From contig NC_052152.1 in the NCBI RefSeq assembly GCF_902713615.1, positions 41,453,810 to 41,517,809 on the forward strand: DNA of 64,000 nucleotides. The letters run 5' to 3'. Below the pieces are notes generated by a model. It worked only from the letters and a program-made list of their open reading frames with translations, searched no databases and was not told the origin of the DNA. A program made the position numbers and the translations under genes. This DNA is from Scyliorhinus canicula. Lineage: Eukaryota. Positions 4,939 through 64,000 of the stretch are shown in pieces (positions within the stretch are counted from its first letter, which is position 1; each line of letters starts with the position of its first letter).

Positions 4939-6140
4939 CGGGTTGCCCTCTGATCCGGCTGATTACCTGGAACGTGAGGGGGCTGAACGGGCCGGTTAAG
5001 AGAACCAGGGTGTTCTCCCATCTAAGGGGGTTGAAGGCGGACGTGGCTATGCTCCAGGAGACCCACCTGAAGGTGGCAGACCAGGTCCATCTGAGGAAGG
5101 GGTGGGTGGGGCAGGTTTATCATTCAGGATTGGACGCGAAGAACCGGGGGGGTGGCGATTCTAGTGGGGAAGAGTGTGGCGTTTGAGGCGGCTGAGGTGG
5201 TGTCGGACAAGGAGGGCAGATATATCATGGTGAAGGGTAGGCTGCAGGGAGAGAAGGTGGTGCTGGTGAACGTATATGCCCCGAATTGGGATGATGCTGG
5301 CTTCATGAGGCGATTGTTGGGCTGCATCCCGGACCTGGAGGCAGGGGGCCTGATCATGGGGGGAGATTTTAACACAGTGCTGGATCCCACACTGGACCGG
5401 TCCAGTTCAAGGACGGGTAGGAGACCGGCGGCGGCCAAAGTGCTGAGGGGATACATGGACCAGATGGGAGGGGTGGATCCCTGGAGGTTTGGGAGACCGA
5501 GAGCGCGGGAGTATTCCTTTTTCTCTCCCGTCCATAGGGTTTATTCCCGGATAGACTTTTTTGTCCTGAGCAGGGGATTGATCCCGAGGATGCAGGATGC
5601 CGAGTATTCGGCCATAGCGATTTCGGACCATGCCCCGCACTGGGTTGATCTGGAGATGGGAGAGGCGCGGGACCAGCGCCCGCTATGGCGCCTGGATGTG
5701 GGGATGCTGGCAGAGGAGGAGGTGTGTAAGAGGGTTTGGAGAAGCATTGAGGGGTGTCTGGATACCAATGATACGGGGGAGGTCCAGGTGGGGATGGTCT
5801 GGGAGGCTCTGAAAGCAGTGATCCGGGGGGAGCTGATCTCCATCCGGGCCCACAGGGAAAGGAGGGAGAGGAAGGAGAGGGAGAGACTGGTGGGAGAGCT
5901 TCTGGAGGTGGACAGGAGATATGCGGAGGCACCGGAGGAAGGGTTGCTGGGAGAACGGCGCAGGTTGGGGTCTTTAGGGACTTTTACGAGGGATTGTACC
6001 GGTCGGAACCTCCGAGGGGAAGAGAGGGGTTGGAGAGCTTCATGAACAGGCTATGTTTCCCAAGGGTTCAAATATAACTTGTTGTTATATTTTTATATTT
6101 TCTGTAAAGAATTCCAATAAAAATTATTTAAAAAAAAAAA
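4189..6140 (+). mobile_element. L1-clade LINE, internally deleted (endonuclease retained, RT lost), with poly(A) and 14-bp TSD
   Basis: APE motifs RLITWNVRGLN, MLQETH, VNVYAPN, GGDFN, SRIDFF and SDHAP (4956-5640, frameshift near 5150). Poly(A) at 6131-6140. AATTCTAAATTTTG occurs at both 4175-4188 and 6141-6154. Confidence 0.92.
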
Positions 6141-7299: not shown

Positions 7300-8392
7300 T
7301 CTAGGCTTTACTTAACTTCAACAGGGAGATTGAGAACCTAATGGAGTGGTGTAGCGACAACAATCTATCCCTCAATGCCATCAAAACTAAAGAGCTGGTC
7401 ATTGACTTCAGGAAGCAAAGTACTGTACACATCCCTGTCAGCATCAACGGGGATGAGGGGGAGATGGTTAGCAGTTTCAAATTCCTAGGGGTGCACATCT
7501 CCGCAAATATGTCCTGGTCCACCCACGCCGATGCTACCACCAAGAAAGCAGAAAAGTGCCTGTACTTCCTCAGGAAACTAAGGAAATTTGGCATGTCCAC
7601 ATTAACCCTTACCAACTTTTACAGATGCACCATAGAAAGCATTCTATATGCCTGCATCGCAGCCTGGTATGGCAACTGCTCGGCCCAAGAGCGCAAGAAA
7701 CTTCAGAGAGTCGTGAACACTGCCCAGTCCATAACACGATCTTGCCTCCCATCCATTGACTCCATCTACACATCCCGCTGCCTGGGGAAAGCGGGCAGCA
7801 TAATCAAAGACCCCTCCCACCCGGCTTTCTCACTCTTCCAACTGCTTCCATCGGGCAGGAGATACAGAAGTCTGAGAATACGGACAAACAGACCCCAAAA
7901 CAGCTTCTTCCCTGCTGTTAATCCTAAACGACCCTCTTATAGAACATAGAACAAAGAAAAATACAGCACAGAACAGGCCCTTCGGCCCACAATGTTGTGC
8001 CGAACTTTTGTCCTAGATTAAGAACAAATTAATCTACACCCCATCATTCTGCCGTAATCCATGTACCTATCCAAAAGTCGTTTGAAGTCCCTAATGTTTT
8101 CGACTCAACTACTTCCACAGGCAGTGCATTCCATGCCCCCACTACTCTCTGGGTAAAGAACCTACCTCTGACATCCCCCCTATATCTTCCACCATTCACC
8201 TTAAATTTATGTCCCCACCCCTGTATGCTTCACCCGATGCCGGTGTCTATGTACTTACATTGTGTACCCTGTGTTGCCCTATTATGTATTTTCTTTTCTT
8301 TTCATGTACTTAATGATCTGTTGAGCTGCTCGCGGAAAAATACTTTTCACTGCATCTCGGTACACGTGACAATAAACAAAATCCAATCCAAC
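7300..8392 (+). mobile_element. Rex1/Babar LINE 3' part (RT C-terminus, DUF1891-like region, 3' UTR)
   Basis: ORF 7341-7949: WCSDNNLSLNAIKTKELVIDFRK...LYFLRKLRKFG...LPSGRRYRS. Tail GTGACAATAAACAAAATCCAATCC. Confidence 0.88.
7940..8217 (-). mobile_element. CR1 LINE 3' end nested in the Rex-Babar 3' UTR
   Basis: TAGAACATAGAAC tail and ACAGGCCCTTCGGCCC, followed by reverse-strand CR1 ORF2 C-terminal sequence. Confidence 0.85.
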
Positions 8393-31437: not shown

Positions 31438-33260
31438 TAGAAACCACCTGACCGACAGAGTTGTCACTGAGCAAATATTTGGGATATTGAAGAAGTAAAC
31501 AGTGGTGAAGAAGAAACACTATCGCTCACTCCATAGTGGCCACCTTAGATTATGACACTGTGAGCCAGATGACCACCATTGAGGAGGGAAGCAACAGTTG
31601 ACAAAATTCCCAACTTTCCCCTTTCCTTCAAAAAGGCTGCCTTCCACCATATTTTCATTTTGGAAGGTGGTGGTATGGGGTTGGACCTCTGGAGGCAGTT
31701 CGGAGGTCATTTGGGATGTTGTCCATATTTTAAAAGTCTGTTGGACCCTCTACCACTCACACCTCCTCACCCAAATGCCCACTCCCTATTCCATTTCCAG
31801 GCCTACCATGCCACCTCTAAATCCAGATAGCGAGACATCTATTTCTCCACATGACCTTCTATGAATGTTTGGCTGAGCTCCAAACCCCACCAATGGATTA
31901 GTTTAACAGGAGGTCTGTTTTCTCAGGTGGAAGTGGAGAGTTTGCTTTGGTTGATTGACATCTTTCAGTCATCGTTTCTTTCAATGCCTATTTTTATTTG
32001 GACATGATTAAAAGGTGTGAAGCGAGGTTAAGCTTCCATTTTTGAAACTGTAATGGCCATTGAGTGACACATTTATAGCATTGTAAGAGCATCAATCTTT
32101 TTCAAACCCTATTTCTGAGTGATTTTTAAGTGGATTTCAAGACTTGCGATTGTTATTGTGTGGCGCACTGTTTCAACAGTGCATACCGCGTGGGTGCATA
32201 TGGAAAGTGCAGGAGATCCATGGAATGGGCAATAGAAAGGTACGGAGAGCATGGAAGGCATGAAGGGGGTATGGGAGACATGGTAGGGGCACGGTGGTCA
32301 TAGATAGGACCGTTTGAACATACCTTTCAATAGTTTCCTGAATAAAGACAATGGTTAATGAATTTGTGAAGGGATCATGAACTACATATCCTTCACAGGC
32401 TGGCCCCACACCACAAGACTTAAGGGGGCTGTGGGTATATGAGATGCAAACCCCATATAGGAGCTGGCCACCATGGAAGCCTGCACCCTTATTCCACAAC
32501 AGTGAAATTTCCATATCGAGAATGGGGGTGGGAATCCCAGAATCAAATTAATTTCACCAACCATATTTAAAGGCCTCCAAAGTCAGCCCAACTCTGTGAA
32601 AATATGACCCTGTGTGCACTTCAGAGGACAGCTTGGAGAGGTAGGAGACCGTGGGCATAAGTGACCTGCAGCCAGGGCAGGGTGCAAGGGTCACACAGTA
32701 TCCAGCTCTCCAGGGGGTGAGATCAGGCATGAGTTCTCCTGCAGATAACTTAGATGGGATGGCATACAGAAGAAGCCACATAATGAAGTCCACGTAATGA
32801 AATTCTTGGTGAGGGCAGACCTGTCAAAGCCTATGTCAAGGAGTCTGTAGGATTCAGGCATGAAGGATTCCAGCAGAGAGCTTTGTGCGGAGCTTCAAGG
32901 AGCTTGACTTCCCCAGATTCCCCCGACTCTAAAACCTTTGAAGAGCTAGTAAAAATAGTAAAGGGGCATTATCAACTGAATCCCTTGATAATCATGCAGA
33001 GATACAAGTTCAACTCAACTGCAAGAGCCCCTGGGGAAGTGATAGCAGCTTCCACGGTGAGATTGAGGCACACAGCTGAACATTGTAAATTTGAGCCTGC
33101 CCGTAATGATATGTTGGAAGACTGTCTAGTGTGTTGGATAAATAATGCCGTCATTCACAAAAAACTGCTAGCAGAGGCAGAAATAATCCTAAAGAAGGCA
33201 CTTGAAATTGCCCTTGCCATGGAAATTGCAGAAAAGACCGTGATGGAGCTTCAAGGCAAT

Positions 33261-33526
33261 GCATGTCAGCGAGATCCGCCAAGGCATGCATGTCAGCGAG
33301 ATCCGCCAAGGCATGCATGTCAGCGAGATCCGCCAAGGCATGCATGTCAGCGAGATCCGCCAAGGTATGCATGTCAGCGAGGTCCGCCAAGGCATGCATG
33401 TCAGCGAGATCCGACAAAGCATGCATGTCAGCGAGGTCCGCCAAGGTATGCATGTCAGCGAGATCCGCCAAGGCATGCATGTCAGCGAGGTCCGCCAAGG
33501 CATGCATGTCAGCGAGATCCGCCAAG
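33261..33526 (+). repeat. 27-bp in-frame tandem repeat inside gag, ~9.8 copies
   Basis: Unit GCATGTCAGCGAGATCCGCCAAGGCAT, encoding (ACQRDPPRH)n. Confidence 0.95.
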
Positions 33527-33590
33527 TTTGGAGAGAAGCTGCTAATGGCAGCAGTGCCAAGGGCACAGAGTTTGGTGAGGAAAAAAAATG

Positions 33591-33761
33591 CTGAGCCTGA
33601 GAGCCTGAGAGCCTGAGAGCCTGAGCCTGAGCCTGAGCCTGAGAGCCTGAGCCTGAGAGCCTGAGCCTGAGCCTGAGCCTGAGAGCCTGAGAGCCTGAGC
33701 CTGAGAGCCTGAGAGCCTGAGCCTGAGAGCCTGAGCCTGAGAGCCTGAGCCTGAGCCTGAA

Positions 33762-33853
<92 letters not shown>

Positions 33854-33894
33854 AGCCTGAGAGCCTGAGAGCCTGAGCCTGAGCCTGAGCGTGA

Positions 33895-33927
<33 letters not shown>

Positions 33928-33974
33928 AGCCTGAGCCTGAGAGCCTGAGCCTGAGAGCCTGAGCCTGAGTCTGA

Positions 33975-34007
<33 letters not shown>

Positions 34008-34418
34008 AGCCTGAGAGCCTGAGCCTGAGAGCCTGAGCCTGAGAGCCTGAGCCTGAGCCTGAGCCTGAGAGCCTGAGAGCCTGGGCTTGAGCCTGAGAGC
34101 CTGAGCCTGAGCCTGAGAGCCTGAGAGCCTGAGAGCCTGAGCTTGAGCCTGAGTCTGAGCCTGAGAGCCTGAGCCTGAGAGCCTGAGCCTGAGAGCCTGA
34201 GCCTGAGTCTGAGCCTGAGAGCCTGAGAGCCTGAGAGCCTGAGCCTGAGGGCCTGAGAGCCTGAGAGCCTGAGCCTGAGCCTGAGCCTGAGAGCCTGAGC
34301 CTGAGAGCCTGAGCCTGAGCCTGAGCATGAGAGCCTGAGCCTGAGAGCCTGAGCCTGAGCCTGAGAGCCTGAGCCTGAGCCTGAGAGCCTGAGCCTGAGA
34401 GCCTGAGCCTGAGCCTGA

Positions 34419-34451
<33 letters not shown>

Positions 34452-35212
34452 AGCCTGAGAGCCTGAGAGCCTGAGCCTGAGCCTGAGAGCCTGAGCCTGA
34501 GAACCTGAGAGCCTGAGAGCCTGAGCCTGAGAGCCTGAGCCTGAGAGCCTGAGCCTGAGCCTGAGAGCCTGAGAGCCTGAGAGCCTGAGCCTGAGAGCCT
34601 GAGAGCCTGAGCCTGAGAGCCTGAGAGCCCGAGCCTGAGCCTGAGAACCTGAGAACCTGAGAGCCTGAGAGCCTGAGCCTGAGCCTGAGAACCTGAGAGC
34701 CTGAGCCTGAGAGCCTGAGCCTGAGCCTAAGCCTGAGCCTGAGCCTGAGCCTGAGAACCTGAGAGCCTGAGCCTGAGAGCCTGAGCCTGAGAACCTGAGA
34801 GCCTGAGAGCCTGAGCCTGAGAACCTGAGCCTGAGAGCCTGAGCCTGAGAGCCTGAGAGCCTGAGAGCCTGAGCCTGAGCCTGAGCCTGAGAGCCTGAGA
34901 GCCTGAGCCTGAGCCTGAGAACCTGAGAGCCTGAGAGCCTGAGCCGGAGCCTGAGCCTGAGCCTGAGCCTGAGAACCTGAGAGCCTGAGAGCCTGAGAGC
35001 CTGAGCCTGAGCCTGAGCCTGAGAACCTGAGCCTGAGCCTGAGCCTGAGAGCCTGAGCCTGAGCCTGAGACCCTGTGCCTGAGCCTGAGAGGCTGAGCCT
35101 GAGAGCCTGAGCCTGAGAGCCTGAGCCTGAGCCTGAGAGCCTGAGCCTGAGCCTGAGCCTGAGAGGCTGAGCCTGAGAGCCTGAGCCTGAGAGCCTGAGC
35201 CTGAGAGCCTGA

Positions 35213-35244
<32 letters not shown>

Positions 35245-35364
35245 ACCTGAGAGCCTGAGCCTGAGCCTGAGAGCCTGAGCCTGAGCCTGAGAGCCTGAGC
35301 CTGAGCCTGAGCCTGAGAGCCTGAGCCTGAGGGCCTGAGCTTGAGGGCCTGAGCCTGAGCCTGA

Positions 35365-35397
<33 letters not shown>

Positions 35398-35458
35398 AGC
35401 CTGAGAGCCTGAGCCTGAGAGCCTGAGCCTGAGAGCCTGAGCCTGAGCCTGAGCCTGA

Positions 35459-35491
<33 letters not shown>

Positions 35492-35536
35492 AGCCTGAGC
35501 CTGAGCCTGAGCGTGAGAGCCTGAGCCTGAGCCTGA

Positions 35537-35569
<33 letters not shown>

Positions 35570-36036
35570 AGCCTGAGCCTGAGCCTGAGCCTGAGAGCCT
35601 GAGCCTGAGAGCCTGAGAGCCTGAGAGCCTGAGCCTGAGCCTGAGCCTGAGAGCCTGAGCCTGAGCCTGAGCCTGAGAGCCTGAGCCTGAGAGCCTGAGC
35701 CTGAGAGCCTGAGCCTGAGAGCCTGAGCCTGANNNNNNNNNNNNNNNNNNNNNNNNNNNNNNNNNNNNNNNNNNNNNNNNNNNNNNNNNNNNNNNNNNNN
35801 NNNNNNNNNNNNNNNNNNNNNNNNNNNNNNNNNNNNNNNNNNNNNNNNNNNNNNNNNNNNNNNNNNNNNNNNNNNNNNNNNNNNNNNNNNNNNNGAGCCT
35901 GAGCCTGAGCCTGAGAGCCTGAGCCTGAGAGCCTGAGCCTGAGCCTGAGAGCCTGAGCCTGAGCCTGGGCCTGAGAGCCTGAGCCTGAGCCTGAGAGCCT
36001 GAGCCTGAGCCTGAGAGCCTGAGCCTGAGAGCCTGA

Positions 36037-36087
<51 letters not shown>

Positions 36088-36508
36088 AGCCTGAGAGCCT
36101 GAGCCTGAGCCTGAGAGCCTGAGCCTGAGAGCCTGAGCCTGAGCCTGAGCCTGAGGGCCTGAGCCTGAGAGCCTGAGCCTGAGAGCCTGAGCCTGAGAGC
36201 CTGAGCCTGAGAGCCTGAGCCTGAGCCTGAGCCTGAGAGCCTGAGCCTGAGAGCCTGAGCCTGAGAGCCTGAGCCTGANNNNNNNNNNNNNNNNNNNNNN
36301 NNNNNNNNNNNNNNNNNNNNNNNNNNNNNNNNNNNNNNNNNNNNNNNNNNNNNNNNNNNNNNNNNNNNNNNNNNNNNNNNNNNNNNNNNNNNNNNNNNNN
36401 NNNNNNNNNNNNNNNNNNNNNNNNNNNNNNNNNNGAGCCTGAGCCTGAGCCTGAGAGCCTGAGCCTGAGAGCCTGAGCCTGAGCCTGAGAGCCTGAGCCT
36501 GAGCCTGA

Positions 36509-58694: not shown

Positions 58695-58852
58695 TGTTTT
58701 TGTTGTACAAATGATGTGCCAGAAAGGCTAATGAAAGACACACAAGGTGTGCTAGGCCGTGGCAATGAATTGTCACGCACAGGCATACTTTAAACTAATT
58801 ATTTTTGCTAAATTATTTCATTGTTGGCTATGTCTATAATGAAAATCTAAGC

Positions 58853-59155
58853 ATCTTTATTATTGTCACAAGTAGGCTTACATTAACAATGCAATGAAGT
58901 TACTGTGAAAATCCCCTAGTCGCCACACTCCGGCGCCTGTTTGGGTACACTGAGGGAGAATTCAGAATGTCCAATTCACCTAACAAACACGTCTTTCGGG
59001 ACTTGTGGGAGGAAACCGGAGCACCCGGAGGAAACCCACGCAGACACGGGGAGAATTTACAGACTCTGCACAGACAGTGATCCAAGCTGGGAATCAAACC
59101 TGGGACCCTAGCGCTGTGAAGCAACAACGCTAACCACTGTGGTACCGTGCCACCC
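58853..59155 (-). mobile_element. Hybrid V-SINE (V head/core with a GTGACAATAA-type tail)
   Basis: Head and core match the V-SINEs; 3' half matches the short-SINE body and tail. Confidence 0.85.
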
Positions 59156-59169
59156 GGCATCTTTATTTT

Positions 59170-59230: not shown

Positions 59231-59345
59231 TTTACCTTTTTAAGATAACACAATTGCACGCCCTCCCCACCTACAACATCAGAGGTGTTGTATCCCTGTT
59301 CCAGAACTGAACTTGAATTTGGCAATTCAACTGATGCTGGGAAAA

Positions 59346-59400
59346 ATGTCTTCATTCATTCATTGTTTTACCAAGTGGATTCTCCTCATGGTTGCTCTAG
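59346..59400 (+). CDS. Exon 1 (signal peptide) of a V-C1-TM Ig-superfamily receptor
   Basis: ATG...MSSFIHCFTKWILLMVAL, then G|GTAAGG donor (phase 1). In-frame upstream ATG at 59334. Splices in frame to 60441. Confidence 0.75.
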
Positions 59401-60440
59401 GTAAGGATACGTTTTAGTGATAATGTTAGTGAAGTTGAGAGATGAGTCTTTGTAATATTGTTTGAAGTTCCTGCTGCATACTGATTGTTATCTTGTCATC
59501 ACTGAAGCTGCTAACTTGCAAGGTTTAGCTTTTGGTCAAGGACTCGGATAGCTTGAATATCGTATTCTTTTCATAGTTATCCAAATTGTTTGAAAAGTAA
59601 TTCTATCAATTTCACTTCCAACTATCTATGGTGTTTTCCCTGTCATTTTAACGAAAAGTCGATTAAAATTCAAAAAAATTTTATTTTAAACCCTGCCACT
59701 CTGTGGTATTGTGAACGTATCCTCAAAGTTAGCAAGGCAGTAAGTGCTTTTGATGCGGGTACTTCCATCCCTTTACGTGCATTTAAACTCTTCTGCGCAA
59801 CAATGCATCATTACAATTTTATTGTATTGGTGAGTAGGCTGTCGAGGACACTTAGAGACATATGCTGACCAATAGACGCATTGATATGAGTATTCGAGCA
59901 GGACCATGAAGGCATTTTGTACTGGTCGATGTTGGAATGTGAGAAATATCCTCATCTGTTGTTTTGCTGACAATGATCTCAATGGTGCACTCTCAAACTA
60001 TCTGATTTAATTGGAAAAACACGAAACTGTCATTGAATCAGACACGGATATTAGAAACCTCTTGTGACAAAGCATATTGATATTAAAAAGCTCTTGGTCT
60101 TTCAAGCAGATATTTTGAACCGCTCCCTGCAATTAACTTGTGTTATTAAAGTAAACAACGACATGTTTTTCCATGACAGACTTTTAATTGCACCGCTGAC
60201 CGGGGTTTCATACCACGATTGCATTCTTCCCTAGAATCAAATCTTGACTAAAAGCGAAAGAAAAGTGAAGACAACTTATGCTGATCTTCAGAATCCATGT
60301 CACGCCTTGTCCATTAAGGACTACCATTTCAATCTTAATTTTAAAGCCCTGGCTTTGAATAAATAAGCAGATTCACAGAGAGATGTTCAAAAGGTTTTTA
60401 ACTACCAATGCTAATTTATTTTGATTTTTCATGGGAACAG

Positions 60441-60812
60441 TTTTGACACATAGTGAAGACGAAGTTTTCCAAACTCCGGCTGTTCTCCGAGCATTCAAGG
60501 GAGAAAGCGCCACCTTCACTTCTCCCTACTGGTCCCATCACTCTCAGGTAGAATCGATGTTTGTGTCCTGGTGGCGAGATATGCGGAAAGAGCCTGTGTG
60601 TGGATTACATTATATGAACAAAACGTTTACACCAAGACCTGGGTGTGATGGCCGAATGACTGTTACTTTGCAGCTCAATTCTGTGGTTACTAACTTTACC
60701 ATTCAAGATCTCCAGCTGAACGACACAGATCATTATTACTATATCATTCAATTTTCTGTGCCACCACCGACCAAAAGCATACATGGAAACAAAACAAGCC
60801 TCATTGTAGAAG
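60441..60812 (+). CDS. Exon 2: VJ-type Ig V-set domain (CD28/NKp30/TMIGD2-like) lacking the canonical Cys pair
   Basis: Acceptor GGAACAG|TT, donor GAAG|GTATGA. Reads VLTHSEDEVFQTPAVLRAFKGESATFTSPY...VSWWRD...GRMTV...FTIQDLQLNDTDHYYYIIQFSVPPPTKSIHGNKTSLIVE. Confidence 0.92.
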
Positions 60813-61042
60813 GTATGATTTAATATCTTAAATATGCCTATAAAAATACAATAAATCAATATGCTGTTGCGTTGATCACGTAAATCTGTTGGATTTCACC
60901 TGGTCACAGATGTCTTTGTAAAGAAATTTCTTGAGGTTATTATCCACTTCAAAACCAACATCTACGTCTGTGTGTTACACAATCAACGTGGAGCATTAAG
61001 TTGGGAGAACAACATCACTATATGCACAATGTTTTTCTTTTT

Positions 61043-61271
61043 CTTTTTTTAATATAAATTTAGTGTACCCAATTAATTTTTTCCAATTAAGGGGCAATTT
61101 AGCGTGGCCAGTCCACCTATCCTGCACATCTTTGGGTTGTGGGGACAAAACCCACGCAAACACGGGGAGAGTGTGCAAACTCCACACGGATAGTGACCCA
61201 GAGTCGGGATCGAATCTGGGGTCTCAGCGCCGTGAGGCAGCAGTGCTAAACACTGCACCACCGTGCTGCCC
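61043..61271 (-). mobile_element. Short V-SINE variant in intron 2
   Basis: Reverse complement of the 11217 family. Confidence 0.88.
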
Positions 61272-61350
61272 TACGTTTTTATTTTTCAATGGAAAATTGT
61301 TTTATTTTTAAATCAAAATTTATAAAACTCGTCACATTTTGTTCCCCAAG

Positions 61351-61659
61351 CTCCTCCAGAAGTGGATGTTGAATTTCTTGCCTGGCCTGAAAATGGGTGC
61401 TGTATACAACTGGTCTGCAGAGCTGTGAACTTCTACCCTGCCAACGTCCAACTGAGGTGGAATAAGGAAGGAAAAGAAGGCTCAGTGTGGATTCAGTCCG
61501 CTATTACTATTACCTCAAACAACAGCAATCTCAGTACATGTTATGTTAATCTCTCTCAATGGGAGAACGGGGATGTATATGCATGTCATGTGAATCACTC
61601 GACGTTGCAAACCCCTCTCGTGAGGAATCTCACAATAGCATTTGATGAACCACATGAAG
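61351..61659 (+). CDS. Exon 3: Ig C1-set domain
   Basis: Acceptor TTCCCCAAG|CT, donor GAAG|GTATTT. C1 signatures LVCRAVNFYPANVQLRW and YACHVNHSTLQTPL. Confidence 0.93.
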
Positions 61660-61952
61660 GTATTTCAAATTCACAGCTTTCTTCCCCTACTTAACTTTTA
61701 AACCGTTCACCGTTTCCTTAACCAGAAAATGAAGGAGCCTCGGTACTTTTAGGTTTCATTCTGTATTCCCACTCTTTATCTGTATTTAGAAAAAAATTGC
61801 AGCTTCGATAAGTAGACCTGATAGCTCTTGAATTCAAAATTACTGTTTTAGTGGCCATACACATGGAAAGCACAGAATTAGCAGAAGTCCTTTTTAACAA
61901 CCTGCCCAGCATGAACTCATATTGCTTCTGATTGCCCTGGCTAAGATTACAA

Positions 61953-62175
61953 GTTTTTAAAAATAAATTTAGAGCATCCATTTTTTTTTCAATTAAGGAG
62001 CAATTTAGTGTGCCCAATCCACCTAACCTGCTCATCTTTGTGTTGTGGAGGTGAAACCCACGCAGACACGGGGAGAATGTGCAAACTCCACACAGACAGT
62101 GACCCGGGTCTGGGATCGAACCCGGGTCCTCAGTGCCGTAGTCCCAGTGCCAACCTCTGTGCCACGTGCCGCCCC
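61953..62175 (-). mobile_element. Short V-SINE variant in intron 3
   Basis: Reverse complement of the 11217 family. Confidence 0.85.
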
Positions 62176-62871
62176 CAAGTTGGGTTTATGTGTTGTTTAT
62201 TAAGTTGATCCACAACCACAAAAAAAATTAAGAAATTAATATGGGGATGTTAGCACCTCATGTCTACGAGACAATTAAATGGAGTGGGAGGAGCGAGTGA
62301 AGATCCATTTCACAAGTTGAGGTAAAAGTGCATTAATAGGACTCTTTCATCACCTTGGCCTGGAGGCCGGTGGGGAGCCTGCAGCACCTATCCCAAGAAC
62401 AAGAAACAAGCCTGAAGAGTGAAAAGGTTTTCCAGGTCCCACCACGTAAGTGTGTAGGCCTCACCAGCCTCGAGTCACACTCTTCACAAATCACAGCCTG
62501 CTTTCTTTCCTCCGCAAAAACTGGCATCTACCCTGGGCCTCGTCCTGTCTCACTCTCCACAAATTCCCACTGACTAAAGGGCAGTATTTCATCAACTATC
62601 CATTATGCTTATAAACCTCGGGCCTGTTCCAGGGGTTAATTAAAATTTAATTTGTTTGCTTGAGAGCATTCTAAAATCTTGCTTGATAGCTTCATGTTCA
62701 GTTACTGCTTCTCAAGCACAATTATTTTCATGTTCTTAACTGAAACAATATAAACAAGAACAGTAACATTTACTTGATTTCAGAAGAAATGTATTAGATT
62801 GGTTATCAGATGACCGGATGTTGTTGAAGCCATTAATTCAAAAACCTTCTTGTTATGTGTTTTTATTGCAG

Positions 62872-62961
62872 ATAGTGTATATATATGGGTGGTGGTCGCT
62901 TCTGTGTGTGTAATTCTAGTAACTGGGGTTGTCTATTTACTAATAAAGTGTTCAAGAAAAG
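62872..62961 (+). CDS. Exon 4: transmembrane segment and start of cytoplasmic tail
   Basis: Acceptor TTTTTATTGCAG|AT, donor AAAAG|GTAAGA. DSVYIWVVVASVCVILVTGVVYLLIKCSRK: hydrophobic stretch followed by a basic stop-transfer. Confidence 0.9.
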
Positions 62962-63242
62962 GTAAGATCCAGATTATTCAAATAATTAAAGTTTGGCATA
63001 TGTGGAAATTAAGTCAGTATTACTCTTTGCACAATTTAATCCAGGTTCCAGTAAGTGGATCTATGAAGGCATTGAATTGAATTAATGCACTTCCATAGTC
63101 AACCTTCAGTCTAACTGTGTTACTTGTACAACTGATAGGGTGTAGTGGGTACGAGCACTATCTTCTCATGTCCTAAACTAATATTCTCAACCCCGTTCCG
63201 ACTGGACATCATCCCACAGTATGAAGGTGGCCTTTATTCCCA

Positions 63243-63435
63243 GGGGCTGGTTTAGCTCACTCGGCTAAATCGCTGGCTTTTAAAACAGACCAAGACAGGC
63301 CAGCAGCACGGTTTGATTCCCGTACCAGCCTCCCCGGACAGGTGCTGGAATGTGGTGACTAGGGGCTTTTCACAGTAACTTAATTGAAGCCTACTCGTGA
63401 CAATAAGCAATTTTCATTTTCATTTCATTTCATTC
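63243..63435 (+). mobile_element. Full-length short tRNA-derived SINE (GTGACAATAA-tail family)
   Basis: GGGGCTGGTTTAGCTCA A box, GGTTTGATTCCC B box and (TTTCA)n tail. Confidence 0.9.
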
Positions 63436-63640
63436 AGTGAATGGCTGTCTGCTGTCGGAATTGGAAAATGTCACAATGCAGCAGTGGGAATACTCGTGTA
63501 GCATTGGATTAAAACACAAGCAGTGTAGAATTTATTCTGTATGTCCAATGTTATAATATAACAAAGGAGTACTTCGGACCAAAATTGGCTTCATCTTGAC
63601 GGACACATAATTCATAAAACTGATATTTTAAACAGCATAA

Positions 63641-63785
63641 GTGGCCGTACCTTCAGCTGTCTTGCTCCTGAGCTCTGGAGTTTCCTCTTTATCTTCCTTT
63701 CCTTCTTTAAGATGCTCCTTAAATTGACTTTTTTGATGAAGCTTTTTGACATTCTGCCCTAATATTGCCTTCTTGAGTCGCAAAT
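63641..63785 (+). mobile_element. L2 LINE 3' tail fragment
   Basis: GGCCGTACCTTCAGCTG...CTCTGGAGTTTCC...TTTAAGATGCTCCTTAAA is typical of L2 ends. Confidence 0.6.
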
Positions 63786-63794
63786 AGTTGGTTT

Positions 63795-64000
63795 ACAGGT
63801 GCAACAGATGATTAATAAAACGATTGCAGTTTTGTCCTTCATTGCGAGAGAGATGGAGTTTAAGACTAGGGAGGTTATGTTGCAACTGTATGCGGTGTTA
63901 GTAAGGTCACACCTGGAGTATTGTGTCCAGTTTTGGTCTCCTTACCTGAGAAAGGACGTACTGGTGCTGGAGGGTGTGCAGAGGAGATTCATTAGGTTAA
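63795..64000 (+). mobile_element. CR1 ORF2 fragment running off the window
   Basis: LQLYAVLVRSHLEYCVQFWSPYLRKDVLVLEGVQRRFIR. Confidence 0.9.

What the first reader, a model, noticed from the sequence alone, without database searches (positions are those of the whole stretch)
59346..62961. Intact non-rearranging leader-VJ-C1-TM receptor gene with antigen-receptor-like architecture
Seen in sequence: four exons (59346-59400, 60441-60812, 61351-61659, 62872-62961), all with GT-AG, phase-1 junctions, joining into one stop-free frame. The J-like G strand (HGNKTSLIV) is already part of the V exon, and I saw no heptamer/nonamer RSS or separate J segment. Established: V plus C1-set pairing is restricted to Ig/TCR and a few non-rearranging families (SIRP, tapasin, B7-H6, PRARP-type genes). 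A germline VJ-C1 gene is the proposed form of the pre-RAG antigen-receptor ancestor. Inference: this may belong to an uncharacterised cartilaginous-fish VJ-C1 receptor family.
Basis: partly seen in the sequence, partly recalled or inferred. Interest (0 to 1): 0.85.

Follow-up and report, generated by a model that had tools for sequence, protein, structure and literature searches.

The report
Shark CD28-like receptor with C1 domain
This is a real, expressed catshark gene for a membrane receptor that joins a CD28/CTLA-4-type binding domain to an antibody-type constant domain, a combination not reported for the CD28 family of immune co-receptors and found so far only in sharks, rays and chimaeras.

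Summary
The four exons have GT-AG borders and phase-1 junctions and join into a 275-residue leader-V-C1-TM frame. One RNA-run contig joins exons 1, 2 and 3 exactly at the predicted borders. No RSS flanks the V exon.

The window is Scyliorhinus canicula. The frame is 100% identical to residues 5-279 of an NCBI model of 405 residues, misnamed "class I histocompatibility antigen-like". The cytoplasmic exons lie beyond the window.

The gene belongs to an uncharacterised, cartilaginous-fish-only V-C1-TM family with two ancient paralogues, here called A and B. However, the V domain is of the CD28 type, not the Ig/TCR type. Foldseek ranks CTLA-4, TMIGD2 (CD28H), CD28 and PD-1 first. The V domain has the PPP loop with CTLA-4 spacing and the extra C'-D cysteine pair. 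The tail carries the YVNV motif of shark CD28H.

The 2024 survey of the CD28 family describes only single-V members. I therefore read this as a CD28H-like co-receptor on a C1 stalk: a new variant of a known kind, not an antigen-receptor ancestor.

The scan's notebook lists 31 unchecked notes of non-rearranging VJ-C1 genes elsewhere in this genome. I did not test whether they are related to this gene.

The parts
59334..59400 (+). Leader exon (first part of a split signal peptide). The transcript starts upstream of 59300.
   Evidence: The RNA contig covers 59300-59398 and extends 37 nt further 5'.
60441..60812 (+). V exon: end of the leader plus a V-set domain with a built-in J-like G strand. 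It has the CD28-type PPP FG loop and a C-x14-C C'-D cysteine pair. Both canonical B and F cysteines are absent.
   Evidence: Pfam V-set 26.5 bits. Best PDB sequence hit is CTLA-4, with the PPP motif and both extra cysteines aligned. Foldseek on the V-only model ranks CTLA-4 at 1-18, then PD-1 and CD28, and puts TMIGD2 first in Swiss-Prot. Motif table. The three transcript SNPs are all synonymous.
61351..61659 (+). C1-set exon (FYP, YACHVNH motifs) with a vicinal CC pair that is invariant in family A, plus a short stalk.
   Evidence: Pfam C1-set 40.6 bits. Best single-domain PDB match is UrIg2 C1 at 31.7 bits, followed by Ig constant domains at about 25 bits. Joined to the V exon in RNA.
62872..62961 (+). 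Transmembrane exon: uncharged TM helix and juxtamembrane KCSRK. It ends in phase 1 with a GT donor, and the gene continues beyond the window.
   Evidence: P0039 continues for 126 more residues. No tail exon was found in 62962-64000.

Best explanation
This is an expressed, germline-joined (non-rearranging) type I membrane receptor gene of the small-spotted catshark. Its ectodomain is a CD28-family V domain, closest to the CD28H/TMIGD2 and CTLA-4 type, carried on one C1-set domain. An uncharged transmembrane helix follows, then a tail encoded outside the window with tyrosine motifs IYVNV, YSFI and IYENT.

It is the catshark member of lineage A of a V-C1-TM family seen only in cartilaginous fish. 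A paralogous lineage B keeps the canonical V cysteines and the GxG bulge, and ends in an IYxxLGQ motif that is ITIM/ITSM-like in some members.

Likely mechanism (inferred, not shown): the invariant PPP FG loop binds a B7-family-like ligand, as in CD28, CTLA-4 and ICOS. The C1 domain acts as a stalk or pairing module. The phosphorylated YxN motifs recruit GRB2-type adaptors, which would make A a co-stimulatory-type partner of an inhibitory-type B.

Shown here: the exon structure, the splicing, the absence of RSS, the family and its distribution, the CD28-type V domain and the motifs. Inferred: the ligand, the signalling and the A/B pairing.
For: Structure and expression.

Identity: P0039 (S. 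canicula, 405 aa) is 100% identical over all 275 residues.

Family: orthologues occur in S. torazame, Carcharodon, Heterodontus, Rhincodon, Chiloscyllium, Stegostoma, Heptranchias and Callorhinchus. Lineage B occurs in sharks, rays, skates and Callorhinchus, where one member is a cDNA-derived RefSeq NP_ record. The A/B split has 100/100 support with the chimaera basal in each lineage. An exhaustive HMMER search of 1.84 billion representatives gave only 24 hits at E<=0.001. Every V-C1 hit whose source I looked up is chondrichthyan.

CD28-type V domain:
- phmmer against the PDB puts CTLA-4 first, with PPP and both extra cysteines aligned.
- Foldseek on the V-only model gives CTLA-4 at ranks 1-18 of 350,542 PDB chains, then PD-1 and CD28.
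- In Swiss-Prot, rank 1 is human TMIGD2, and 15 of the top 16 are CD28-family proteins.
- The Atlas structural neighbour of the white-shark orthologue is 'CTLA-4-like', TM 0.81.
- 10 of 13 family V domains hit Pfam ICOS V-set; three lineage-B members exceed the curated cut-off.
- The nearest non-family V domain is a sturgeon V-TM protein that is 67% identical to a paddlefish 'TMIGD2-like' protein.

Motifs: Quiniou et al. 2024 (PMC11599192, supplement 4) list EIPPPP..GNG and YVNV for skate and shark CD28H. Family A has IPPPT..GNKT and IYVNV.
Against: The catshark V domain itself barely reaches the Pfam V-set cut-off and does not hit ICOS V-set.

A family V profile against the PDB scores generic antibody and TCR V domains highly, and no CTLA-4 chain appears in the top 60 shown.

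The defining CD28-family feature, a single V ectodomain, is not met.

No proper V tree with bona fide CD28, CD28H, Ig/TCR, NKp30 and UrIg sequences could be built, because no tool supplied those sequences.

Synteny, tissue of expression, ligand and signalling are all untested.

The AF2 models have moderate confidence (pLDDT 75-76) and rest on 13 sequences.
Confidence: 0.7

Rival explanations
1. Relic of the pre-RAG antigen-receptor precursor: a germline VJ-C1 gene of the kind that the RAG transposon later split, comparable to UrIg/UrIg2.
For: It has the V(J-like)-C1-TM layout with a split leader and phase-1 exons and no RSS. The best single-domain PDB match of the C1 domain is elasmobranch UrIg2 C1, followed by Ig constant domains. 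Fab light chains and TCR beta are among the two-domain Foldseek hits. The CD28 survey itself links GxG-bearing CD28 V domains to the VJ group.
Against: The V domain's nearest relatives are CD28-family V domains, not Ig/TCR V domains. UrIg2 is not among the 60 PDB sequence hits shown for the V domain. The G strand lacks FGxG. The family was found only in Chondrichthyes. UrIg/UrIg2 have three or more C domains and a typical VJ.
Confidence: 0.12
2. A B7/butyrophilin-type ligand (V-C ectodomain) rather than a CD28-type receptor.
For: The two-domain model's best Foldseek hits are B7-H6, butyrophilins, SKINTs and PD-L1.
Against: Those hits reflect the generic V-C1 arrangement (TM 0.4-0.58, 13-23% identity). 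The V-only search shows no B7 or butyrophilin in the top 50 PDB hits or the top 30 Swiss-Prot hits. The J-like G strand, the PPP loop and the tyrosine-motif tail are receptor features.
Confidence: 0.06
3. A decaying gene in Scyliorhinus: loss of both canonical V cysteines marks relaxed constraint, so the transcript encodes a non-functional or misfolding V domain.
For: The B-strand cysteine is absent in all of lineage A, and the F-strand cysteine is additionally lost only in the two Scyliorhinus species. Pfam V-set is at or below the cut-off in these species (26.5 and 23.3 bits against 26).
Against: The frame is intact and the message is correctly spliced at word depth about 24. All three SNPs in the V exon are synonymous. 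S. torazame keeps the same frame with 88% (V) and 94% (C1) identity. The Scyliorhinus stem branch is no longer than the orectolobiform stem. The C'-D cysteine pair, the core Trp and the PPP motif are kept. AF2 still folds the sequence as a V domain. From general knowledge, V domains without the canonical disulfide exist, for example CD2 domain 1.
Confidence: 0.07

Closest known systems
CD28H / TMIGD2 and its paralogues CD28HL1-3 and CD28X (CD28 family as defined by Quiniou et al. 2024, PMC11599192)
   Same: The V domain fold and sequence are nearest to TMIGD2, CTLA-4, CD28 and PD-1. The FG loop follows Y-x-(C)-x6-PPP-x5-G-N, with the same spacing as the CTLA-4/CD28X signature. Shark and skate CD28H have EIPPPP..GNG. 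The membrane-proximal YVNV motif is identical to that of shark, skate and turtle CD28H, and a second YxN motif sits near the C-terminus, as in CD28HL2. It is a type I protein with an uncharged TM.
   Different: It has a C1-set domain between V and TM, whereas every described CD28-family member has a single V domain. In the catshark both canonical cysteines are lost and GxG has become GNK. The family was found only in cartilaginous fish. Synteny with the CD28H/HL blocks was not tested.
CTLA-4 / CD28
   Same: CTLA-4 is the best PDB hit by sequence and by structure. The PPP loop and the extra C'-D disulfide cysteines align. Family A has the YxN part of the CD28 YMNM motif.
   Different: Identity is only 24-30% in the Foldseek alignments to CTLA-4. 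There is no stalk cysteine and no YxxxxT TM dimer motif. A C1 domain is present. Sharks already have a separate three-gene CD28/CTLA4 cluster.
UrIg and UrIg2 (non-rearranging VJ-C1 genes of elasmobranchs; Flajnik et al. 2023 and 2025, PMC12227049)
   Same: Germline-joined V exon with a split leader, followed by a C1-type exon, and no RSS. Restricted to cartilaginous fish. UrIg2 C1 is the best single-domain PDB match of the C1 exon.
   Different: UrIg is reported as V plus three C domains (UrIg2's three N-terminal C domains are paralogues of UrIg's), and UrIg2 as V plus 9-11 C domains. Their V domains group with Ig/TCR. Here there is one C1 domain and a CD28-type V domain. UrIg2 is not among the 60 PDB hits shown for the V domain.
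B7-H6, butyrophilins, SIRP, tapasin-related protein (other V-C1 proteins)
   Same: The overall V-C1 ectodomain arrangement; these are the top Foldseek hits of the two-domain model.
   Different: There is no specific V-domain similarity: none of them appears in the listed V-only hits. Domain numbers and tails also differ.

Membership tests
CD28 family (Quiniou et al. 2024) | Single extracellular IgSF V domain | tested here: not met
   V-set plus C1-set exons are joined in one transcript. The same architecture is seen in the orthologue and paralogue models that cover both domains.
CD28 family (Quiniou et al. 2024) | V domain most similar to CD28-family V domains | tested here: met
   CTLA-4 is the top phmmer hit against the PDB. 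Foldseek PDB ranks 1-18 are CTLA-4, followed by PD-1 and CD28. In Swiss-Prot, TMIGD2 is first and 15 of the top 16 are CD28-family proteins. No formal tree was built.
CD28 family (Quiniou et al. 2024) | CDR3/FG-loop motif YxC-x(n)-(E)IP or PPP | tested here: met
   PPP is invariant across the 13 aligned family V domains, with CTLA-4 spacing. In the catshark the preceding Cys is replaced by Tyr.
CD28 family (Quiniou et al. 2024) | GxG bulge in the G strand (present in CTLA-4-like members, optional in the family) | tested here: not met
   The window gene and lineage A have GN(K/A/S)T. Lineage B keeps GxGT.
CD28 family (Quiniou et al. 2024) | Cytoplasmic tyrosine signalling motif (YxN[V/M] in CD28H) | tested here: met
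   IYVNV and IYENT are present in P0039 and its orthologues. They are encoded outside the window.
CD28 family (Quiniou et al. 2024) | Conserved synteny block of a named member | not testable with these tools
   No DNA or neighbouring genes were returned for the chromosome records. The rest of the window holds only repeats.
Rearranging antigen receptors (Ig/TCR) | RSS-flanked V and separate J segments | tested here: not met
   There is no RSS beside the V or C1 exon. The G strand is part of the V exon, which splices directly to C1.
Rearranging antigen receptors (Ig/TCR) | Canonical V disulfide and F/W-G-x-G J motif | tested here: not met
   The B and F cysteines are absent, and the G strand reads HGNKTSLIV.
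Rearranging antigen receptors (Ig/TCR) | V domain followed by a C1-set domain | tested here: met
UrIg / UrIg2 | VJ exon followed by three or more C1-type domains | tested here: not met
   There is one C1 exon, then the TM exon. UrIg architecture as described in PMC12227049.
UrIg / UrIg2 | V and C domains cluster with UrIg | tested here: inconclusive
   The best single-domain PDB hit of the C1 domain is UrIg2 C1, at 31.7 bits against about 25 for Ig C domains. The V domain shows no UrIg2 hit among the 60 shown. No tree was built.
B7 / butyrophilin family | B7-type V domain | tested here: not met
   The V-only Foldseek lists contain no B7 or butyrophilin. Only the two-domain arrangement matches.

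The most novel reading that the evidence does not exclude
The V-C1 form is the ancestral architecture of the CD28 family. On this reading, co-stimulatory receptors descend from the same germline VJ-C1 stock as antigen receptors and UrIg, cartilaginous fish keep this intermediate in two lineages more than 400 million years old, and all other CD28-family genes lost the C1 exon. The alternative is a chondrichthyan exon-shuffling event that inserted a phase-1 C1 exon into a CD28H-like gene.
Probability: 0.15. Interest if true: 0.85.

Novelty: new variant of a known kind. Interest (0 to 1): 0.62.

Why it matters
[quoted passage not shown] Quiniou et al. 2024 write that their work did not reveal it, and they note only the GxG link to VJ-type domains.

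A conserved CD28-type V domain on a C1-set domain gives a concrete object for testing whether co-stimulatory receptors and antigen receptors share a VJ-C1 ancestor. This family is present in chimaera and sharks (lineage A) and in chimaera, sharks and batoids (lineage B), and the two lineages carry different tyrosine tails.

It also adds candidate co-stimulatory and inhibitory receptors to shark immunology. In addition, it corrects misleading automatic names given to these proteins: 'class I histocompatibility antigen-like', 'HLA-DM beta-like', 'Ig kappa light chain-like' and 'SIRP-like'.

Tried and rejected
- No second copy of the V, C1 or TM exon exists in the window.
- A family V profile against the PDB is dominated by multi-domain antibody constructs and does not discriminate between V types.
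- The two-domain Foldseek searches return generic V-C1 proteins.
- The feature-based Atlas hits (CD22, nectin, MPZL1, PD-1) are unspecific.
- The look-up of encoding contigs returned no DNA and no neighbouring genes for the catshark, cloudy catshark and white-shark loci. Synteny and dN/dS could therefore not be computed.
- No Logan-derived protein of the family was found.
- The long ORFs elsewhere in the window are LINE fragments or translated minisatellites and give no synteny marker.
- Literature searches for PRARP, VJ-C1, CD28H, CD28HL, CD28X and non-rearranging shark receptors found no description of a CD28-type V-C1 gene. The 2023 UrIg paper (PMC10530332) is not held.
- hhalign of the family V profile against the chondrostean TMIGD2-like V profile gives 98.7% probability. 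I ran no control V family, so I give this little weight.
- A search of earlier findings by sequence returned nothing.
Full report
**1. The observation**

- Each is followed by GT, and exons 2-4 are preceded by AG.
- Their lengths are 55, 372, 309 and 90 nt, so every junction is in phase 1.
- The joined frame gives 275 residues with no stop: signal peptide, V domain, C1 domain, short stalk, and an uncharged transmembrane helix ending in KCSRK.
- Pfam assigns exon 2 to V-set (26.5 bits, just over the cut-off of 26) and exon 3 to C1-set (40.6 bits, cut-off 21).

Public RNA runs of the same species hold the exons but not the introns. Run X1 holds 0.56 of the sampled words of 60441-61659, which equals the exonic share of that stretch.

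When laid on 59300-61700, one 1207-nt contig of X1 (word depth 23.9) covers 59300-59398, 60439-60809 and 61348-61659. It has two GT..AG joints. After the tool's stated offsets these are 59400|60441 and 60812|61351. The contig continues 388 nt beyond exon 3. Run X2 shows the exon 1-2 joint as well.

The three differences between that transcript and the genome in the V exon are all synonymous.

A heptamer-spacer-nonamer scan of 56-64 kb found one weak site at 63371. It lies inside a SINE and is next to no V or J. The whole 64-kb window holds no other site. No further V, C1 or TM exon lies in the window.

**2. What the gene is**

The spliced frame is 100% identical over all 275 residues to residues 5-279 of P0039. 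P0039 is a 405-residue NCBI model from Scyliorhinus canicula named [quoted passage not shown]. So the window is small-spotted catshark.
- The gene is already predicted, under a misleading name.
- It spans 11.3 kb in the assembly.
- About 126 residues of cytoplasmic tail are encoded beyond base 64000. None of that tail maps inside the window.
- The model starts at an in-frame ATG 12 nt upstream, at 59334.

**3. The family**

I ran an exhaustive HMMER search with the V exon against 1.84 billion representative proteins. Only 24 hits reached E<=0.001. The meaningful ones, with follow-up searches, define two lineages.

Lineage A, which includes the window gene:
- Members: S. torazame (91% identity), Carcharodon, Heterodontus, Rhincodon, Chiloscyllium, Stegostoma, Heptranchias (55-65%) and Callorhinchus (34%).

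Lineage B, at 28-31% identity:
- Members: Hemitrygon, Pristis, Pristiophorus, Stegostoma, Carcharodon, Amblyraja and Callorhinchus.
- One Callorhinchus member is a cDNA-derived RefSeq NP_ record.

All models that cover both domains have the V-C1 architecture, and those that extend further add a TM and tail. Their automatic names conflict: uncharacterized, Ig kappa light chain-like, HLA-DM beta-like, SIRP-like.

A maximum-likelihood tree of the ectodomains separates A from B with 100/100 support and places the chimaera basal in each lineage. The tree was rooted at the midpoint. On that root, the duplication predates the split of Holocephali and Elasmobranchii.

A and B sit on the same chromosome-scale record in white shark (118.5 Mb) and in zebra shark (82.1 Mb). 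The distance between them is unknown. I found no bony-fish or tetrapod V-C1 member.

**4. The V domain is of the CD28 type**

Several lines of evidence agree.

(a) phmmer of the V exon against all PDB sequences puts CTLA-4 first (E 0.02). The alignment matches the PPP loop and both non-canonical cysteines (C' and D strands).

(b) AlphaFold2 on the V alignment gives a V fold with pLDDT 75.
- Foldseek against 350,542 PDB chains returns CTLA-4 at ranks 1-18, then PD-1 and CD28. This is despite the very large number of antibody and TCR V domains in that library.
- Against Swiss-Prot models, rank 1 is human TMIGD2 (CD28H). Fifteen of the top 16 are TMIGD2, CTLA-4, CD28 or PD-1.

(c) The Atlas structural neighbour of the white-shark orthologue's V domain is a "CTLA-4-like" cluster, TM 0.81.

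(d) Ten of 13 family V domains hit Pfam PF15910 (ICOS V-set). Three lineage-B members exceed its curated cut-off.

(e) The nearest V domain outside the family is a sturgeon V-TM protein. It is 67% identical to a paddlefish protein named TMIGD2-like.

(f) Motifs.
- The family consensus is Y-x-C-x6-PPP-x5-G-x-G/K-T-x-L-x-V, the spacing given for CTLA-4/CD28X.
- Quiniou et al. 2024 list EIPPPP..GNG and the cytoplasmic motif YVNV for skate and epaulette-shark CD28H (PMC11599192, supplement 4).
- Lineage A has IPPPT..GNKT, a membrane-proximal (I/L/T)YVN(V/F) and a C-terminal (I/V)Y(E/Q)N(T/A).

Against this, two results point the other way.
- The catshark V domain alone barely passes V-set and does not hit ICOS V-set.
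- A family profile scores generic antibody and TCR V domains highly.

I could not build a tree with authentic CD28-family, Ig/TCR and UrIg sequences, because no tool supplied them as usable records.

**5. Peculiarities**

- All lineage-A proteins that include the B strand lack its cysteine.
- The F-strand cysteine is kept in other sharks but replaced by tyrosine in both Scyliorhinus species. The catshark V domain therefore has neither canonical cysteine.
- The C-x14-C C'-D pair, the core tryptophan, the D-x-x-x-Y motif and the PPP loop are retained.
- Lineage A also has an invariant vicinal CC pair, five residues before the canonical B-strand cysteine of the C1 domain. Lineage B lacks it. Its partner is unknown.
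- The G strand of lineage A reads GN(K/A/S)T, which creates a glycosylation site instead of the GxG bulge. Lineage B keeps GxGT.
- The catshark tail contains a 17-residue repeat expansion that is absent from the other species.

**6. The C1 domain**

It has the classical FYP and Y-x-C-x-V-x-H motifs. Its best single-domain PDB match is the C1 domain of elasmobranch UrIg2 (31.7 bits), followed by Ig constant domains at about 25 bits.

The two-domain AF2 model (pLDDT 76) matches B7-H6, butyrophilins, Fab light chains, tapasin-related protein, SIRP and PD-L1 with TM 0.35-0.58. I take this to reflect the generic V-C1 layout only.

**7. Literature**

- UrIg and UrIg2 are the described non-rearranging VJ-C1 genes of elasmobranchs. 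UrIg is reported as V plus three C domains, and UrIg2 as V plus 9-11 C domains. Their V domains are affiliated with Ig/TCR (PMC12227049; PMC10751288).
- The CD28 family was surveyed across jawed vertebrates in 2024. [quoted passage not shown] The accession numbers of the present family do not occur in that paper's supplements.
- Further searches found no description of a CD28-type V-C1 gene.
- Subscription-only papers are not covered, so prior description cannot be excluded.

**8. Most likely function**

This section is inference from established knowledge of the CD28 family.
- The protein is a type I receptor whose invariant PPP FG loop binds a B7-family-like ligand.
- The C1 domain raises the V domain from the membrane or mediates pairing.
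- The uncharged TM argues against signalling through DAP12/FcR-gamma-type adaptors.
- The tail's pYxN motifs (YVNV, YENT) fit GRB2-family SH2 binding, as in CD28 and CD28H.
- Lineage B carries a conserved IYxxLGQ motif, which is TxYxxL in the skate. It may be the inhibitory counterpart.
- None of this was tested.

**9. Verdict**

The gene is a non-rearranging V-C1 receptor of an uncharacterised cartilaginous-fish family. Its V domain places it with the CD28/CD28H co-receptors rather than with antigen receptors. It fails the CD28-family criterion of a single V ectodomain. I therefore class it as a new variant of a known kind.

Whether the C1 domain is ancestral to the CD28 family or was added in the chondrichthyan stem is open. 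The first possibility is the most novel reading; I give it about 15%.

The scan's notebook lists 31 unchecked notes of non-rearranging VJ-C1 genes on other pieces of this genome. I did not test whether they belong to this family.

Noticed in passing
window 12273-14357: G-rich minisatellite: 19-nt unit TGGGCAGGAGGTTGCCGGA, about 111 copies, 92% matches. It accounts for the GC and GC-skew peak and for the long spurious ORFs there.
   Followed up: partly
window 33252-36278: Arrays of a 27-nt unit and of GAGCCT-based 6/14/20-nt units. They are interrupted by two N runs (35733-35894, 36279-36434) and give spurious ORFs of more than 1100 codons with no Pfam hit.
   Followed up: partly
window 61050-61290, 61960-62190 and 58850-59160: tRNA-related SINE copies lie in introns 2 and 3 and upstream of the gene. 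The intron-2 copy draws word depths of 10^4-10^5 in RNA runs from other copies across the genome. A 39-nt part of the upstream copy tripped the read laying filter.
   Followed up: no
window 63371-63408: The only RSS-like site in the window (CACAGTA, 22-nt spacer, ACAATAAGC). It lies inside another SINE type, a copy of which also occurs inverted near 58860-58920. I take it to be a chance match within a repeat.
   Followed up: partly
window 61390-61410 (C1 exon, residues ENGCCIQLVC): Vicinal cysteine pair that is invariant in all lineage-A proteins and absent from lineage B. Its disulfide partner or role (for example in dimerisation) is unknown.
   Followed up: no
outside the window (P0039 residues about 300-385): The catshark cytoplasmic tail carries several copies of a repeat of about 17 residues (NRNLGQNQG-ASTRQ-) between the YVNV and YSFI/YENT motifs. 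The repeat is not seen in other sharks.
   Followed up: no
window 5152-6045 and 7341-7949: LINE-type fragments: an Exo_endo_phos domain and an ALKBH8_N-like match. I recognised no host gene in the first 59 kb of the window.
   Followed up: partly
The NCBI model uses it (MLGKMSS...).
   Followed up: yes
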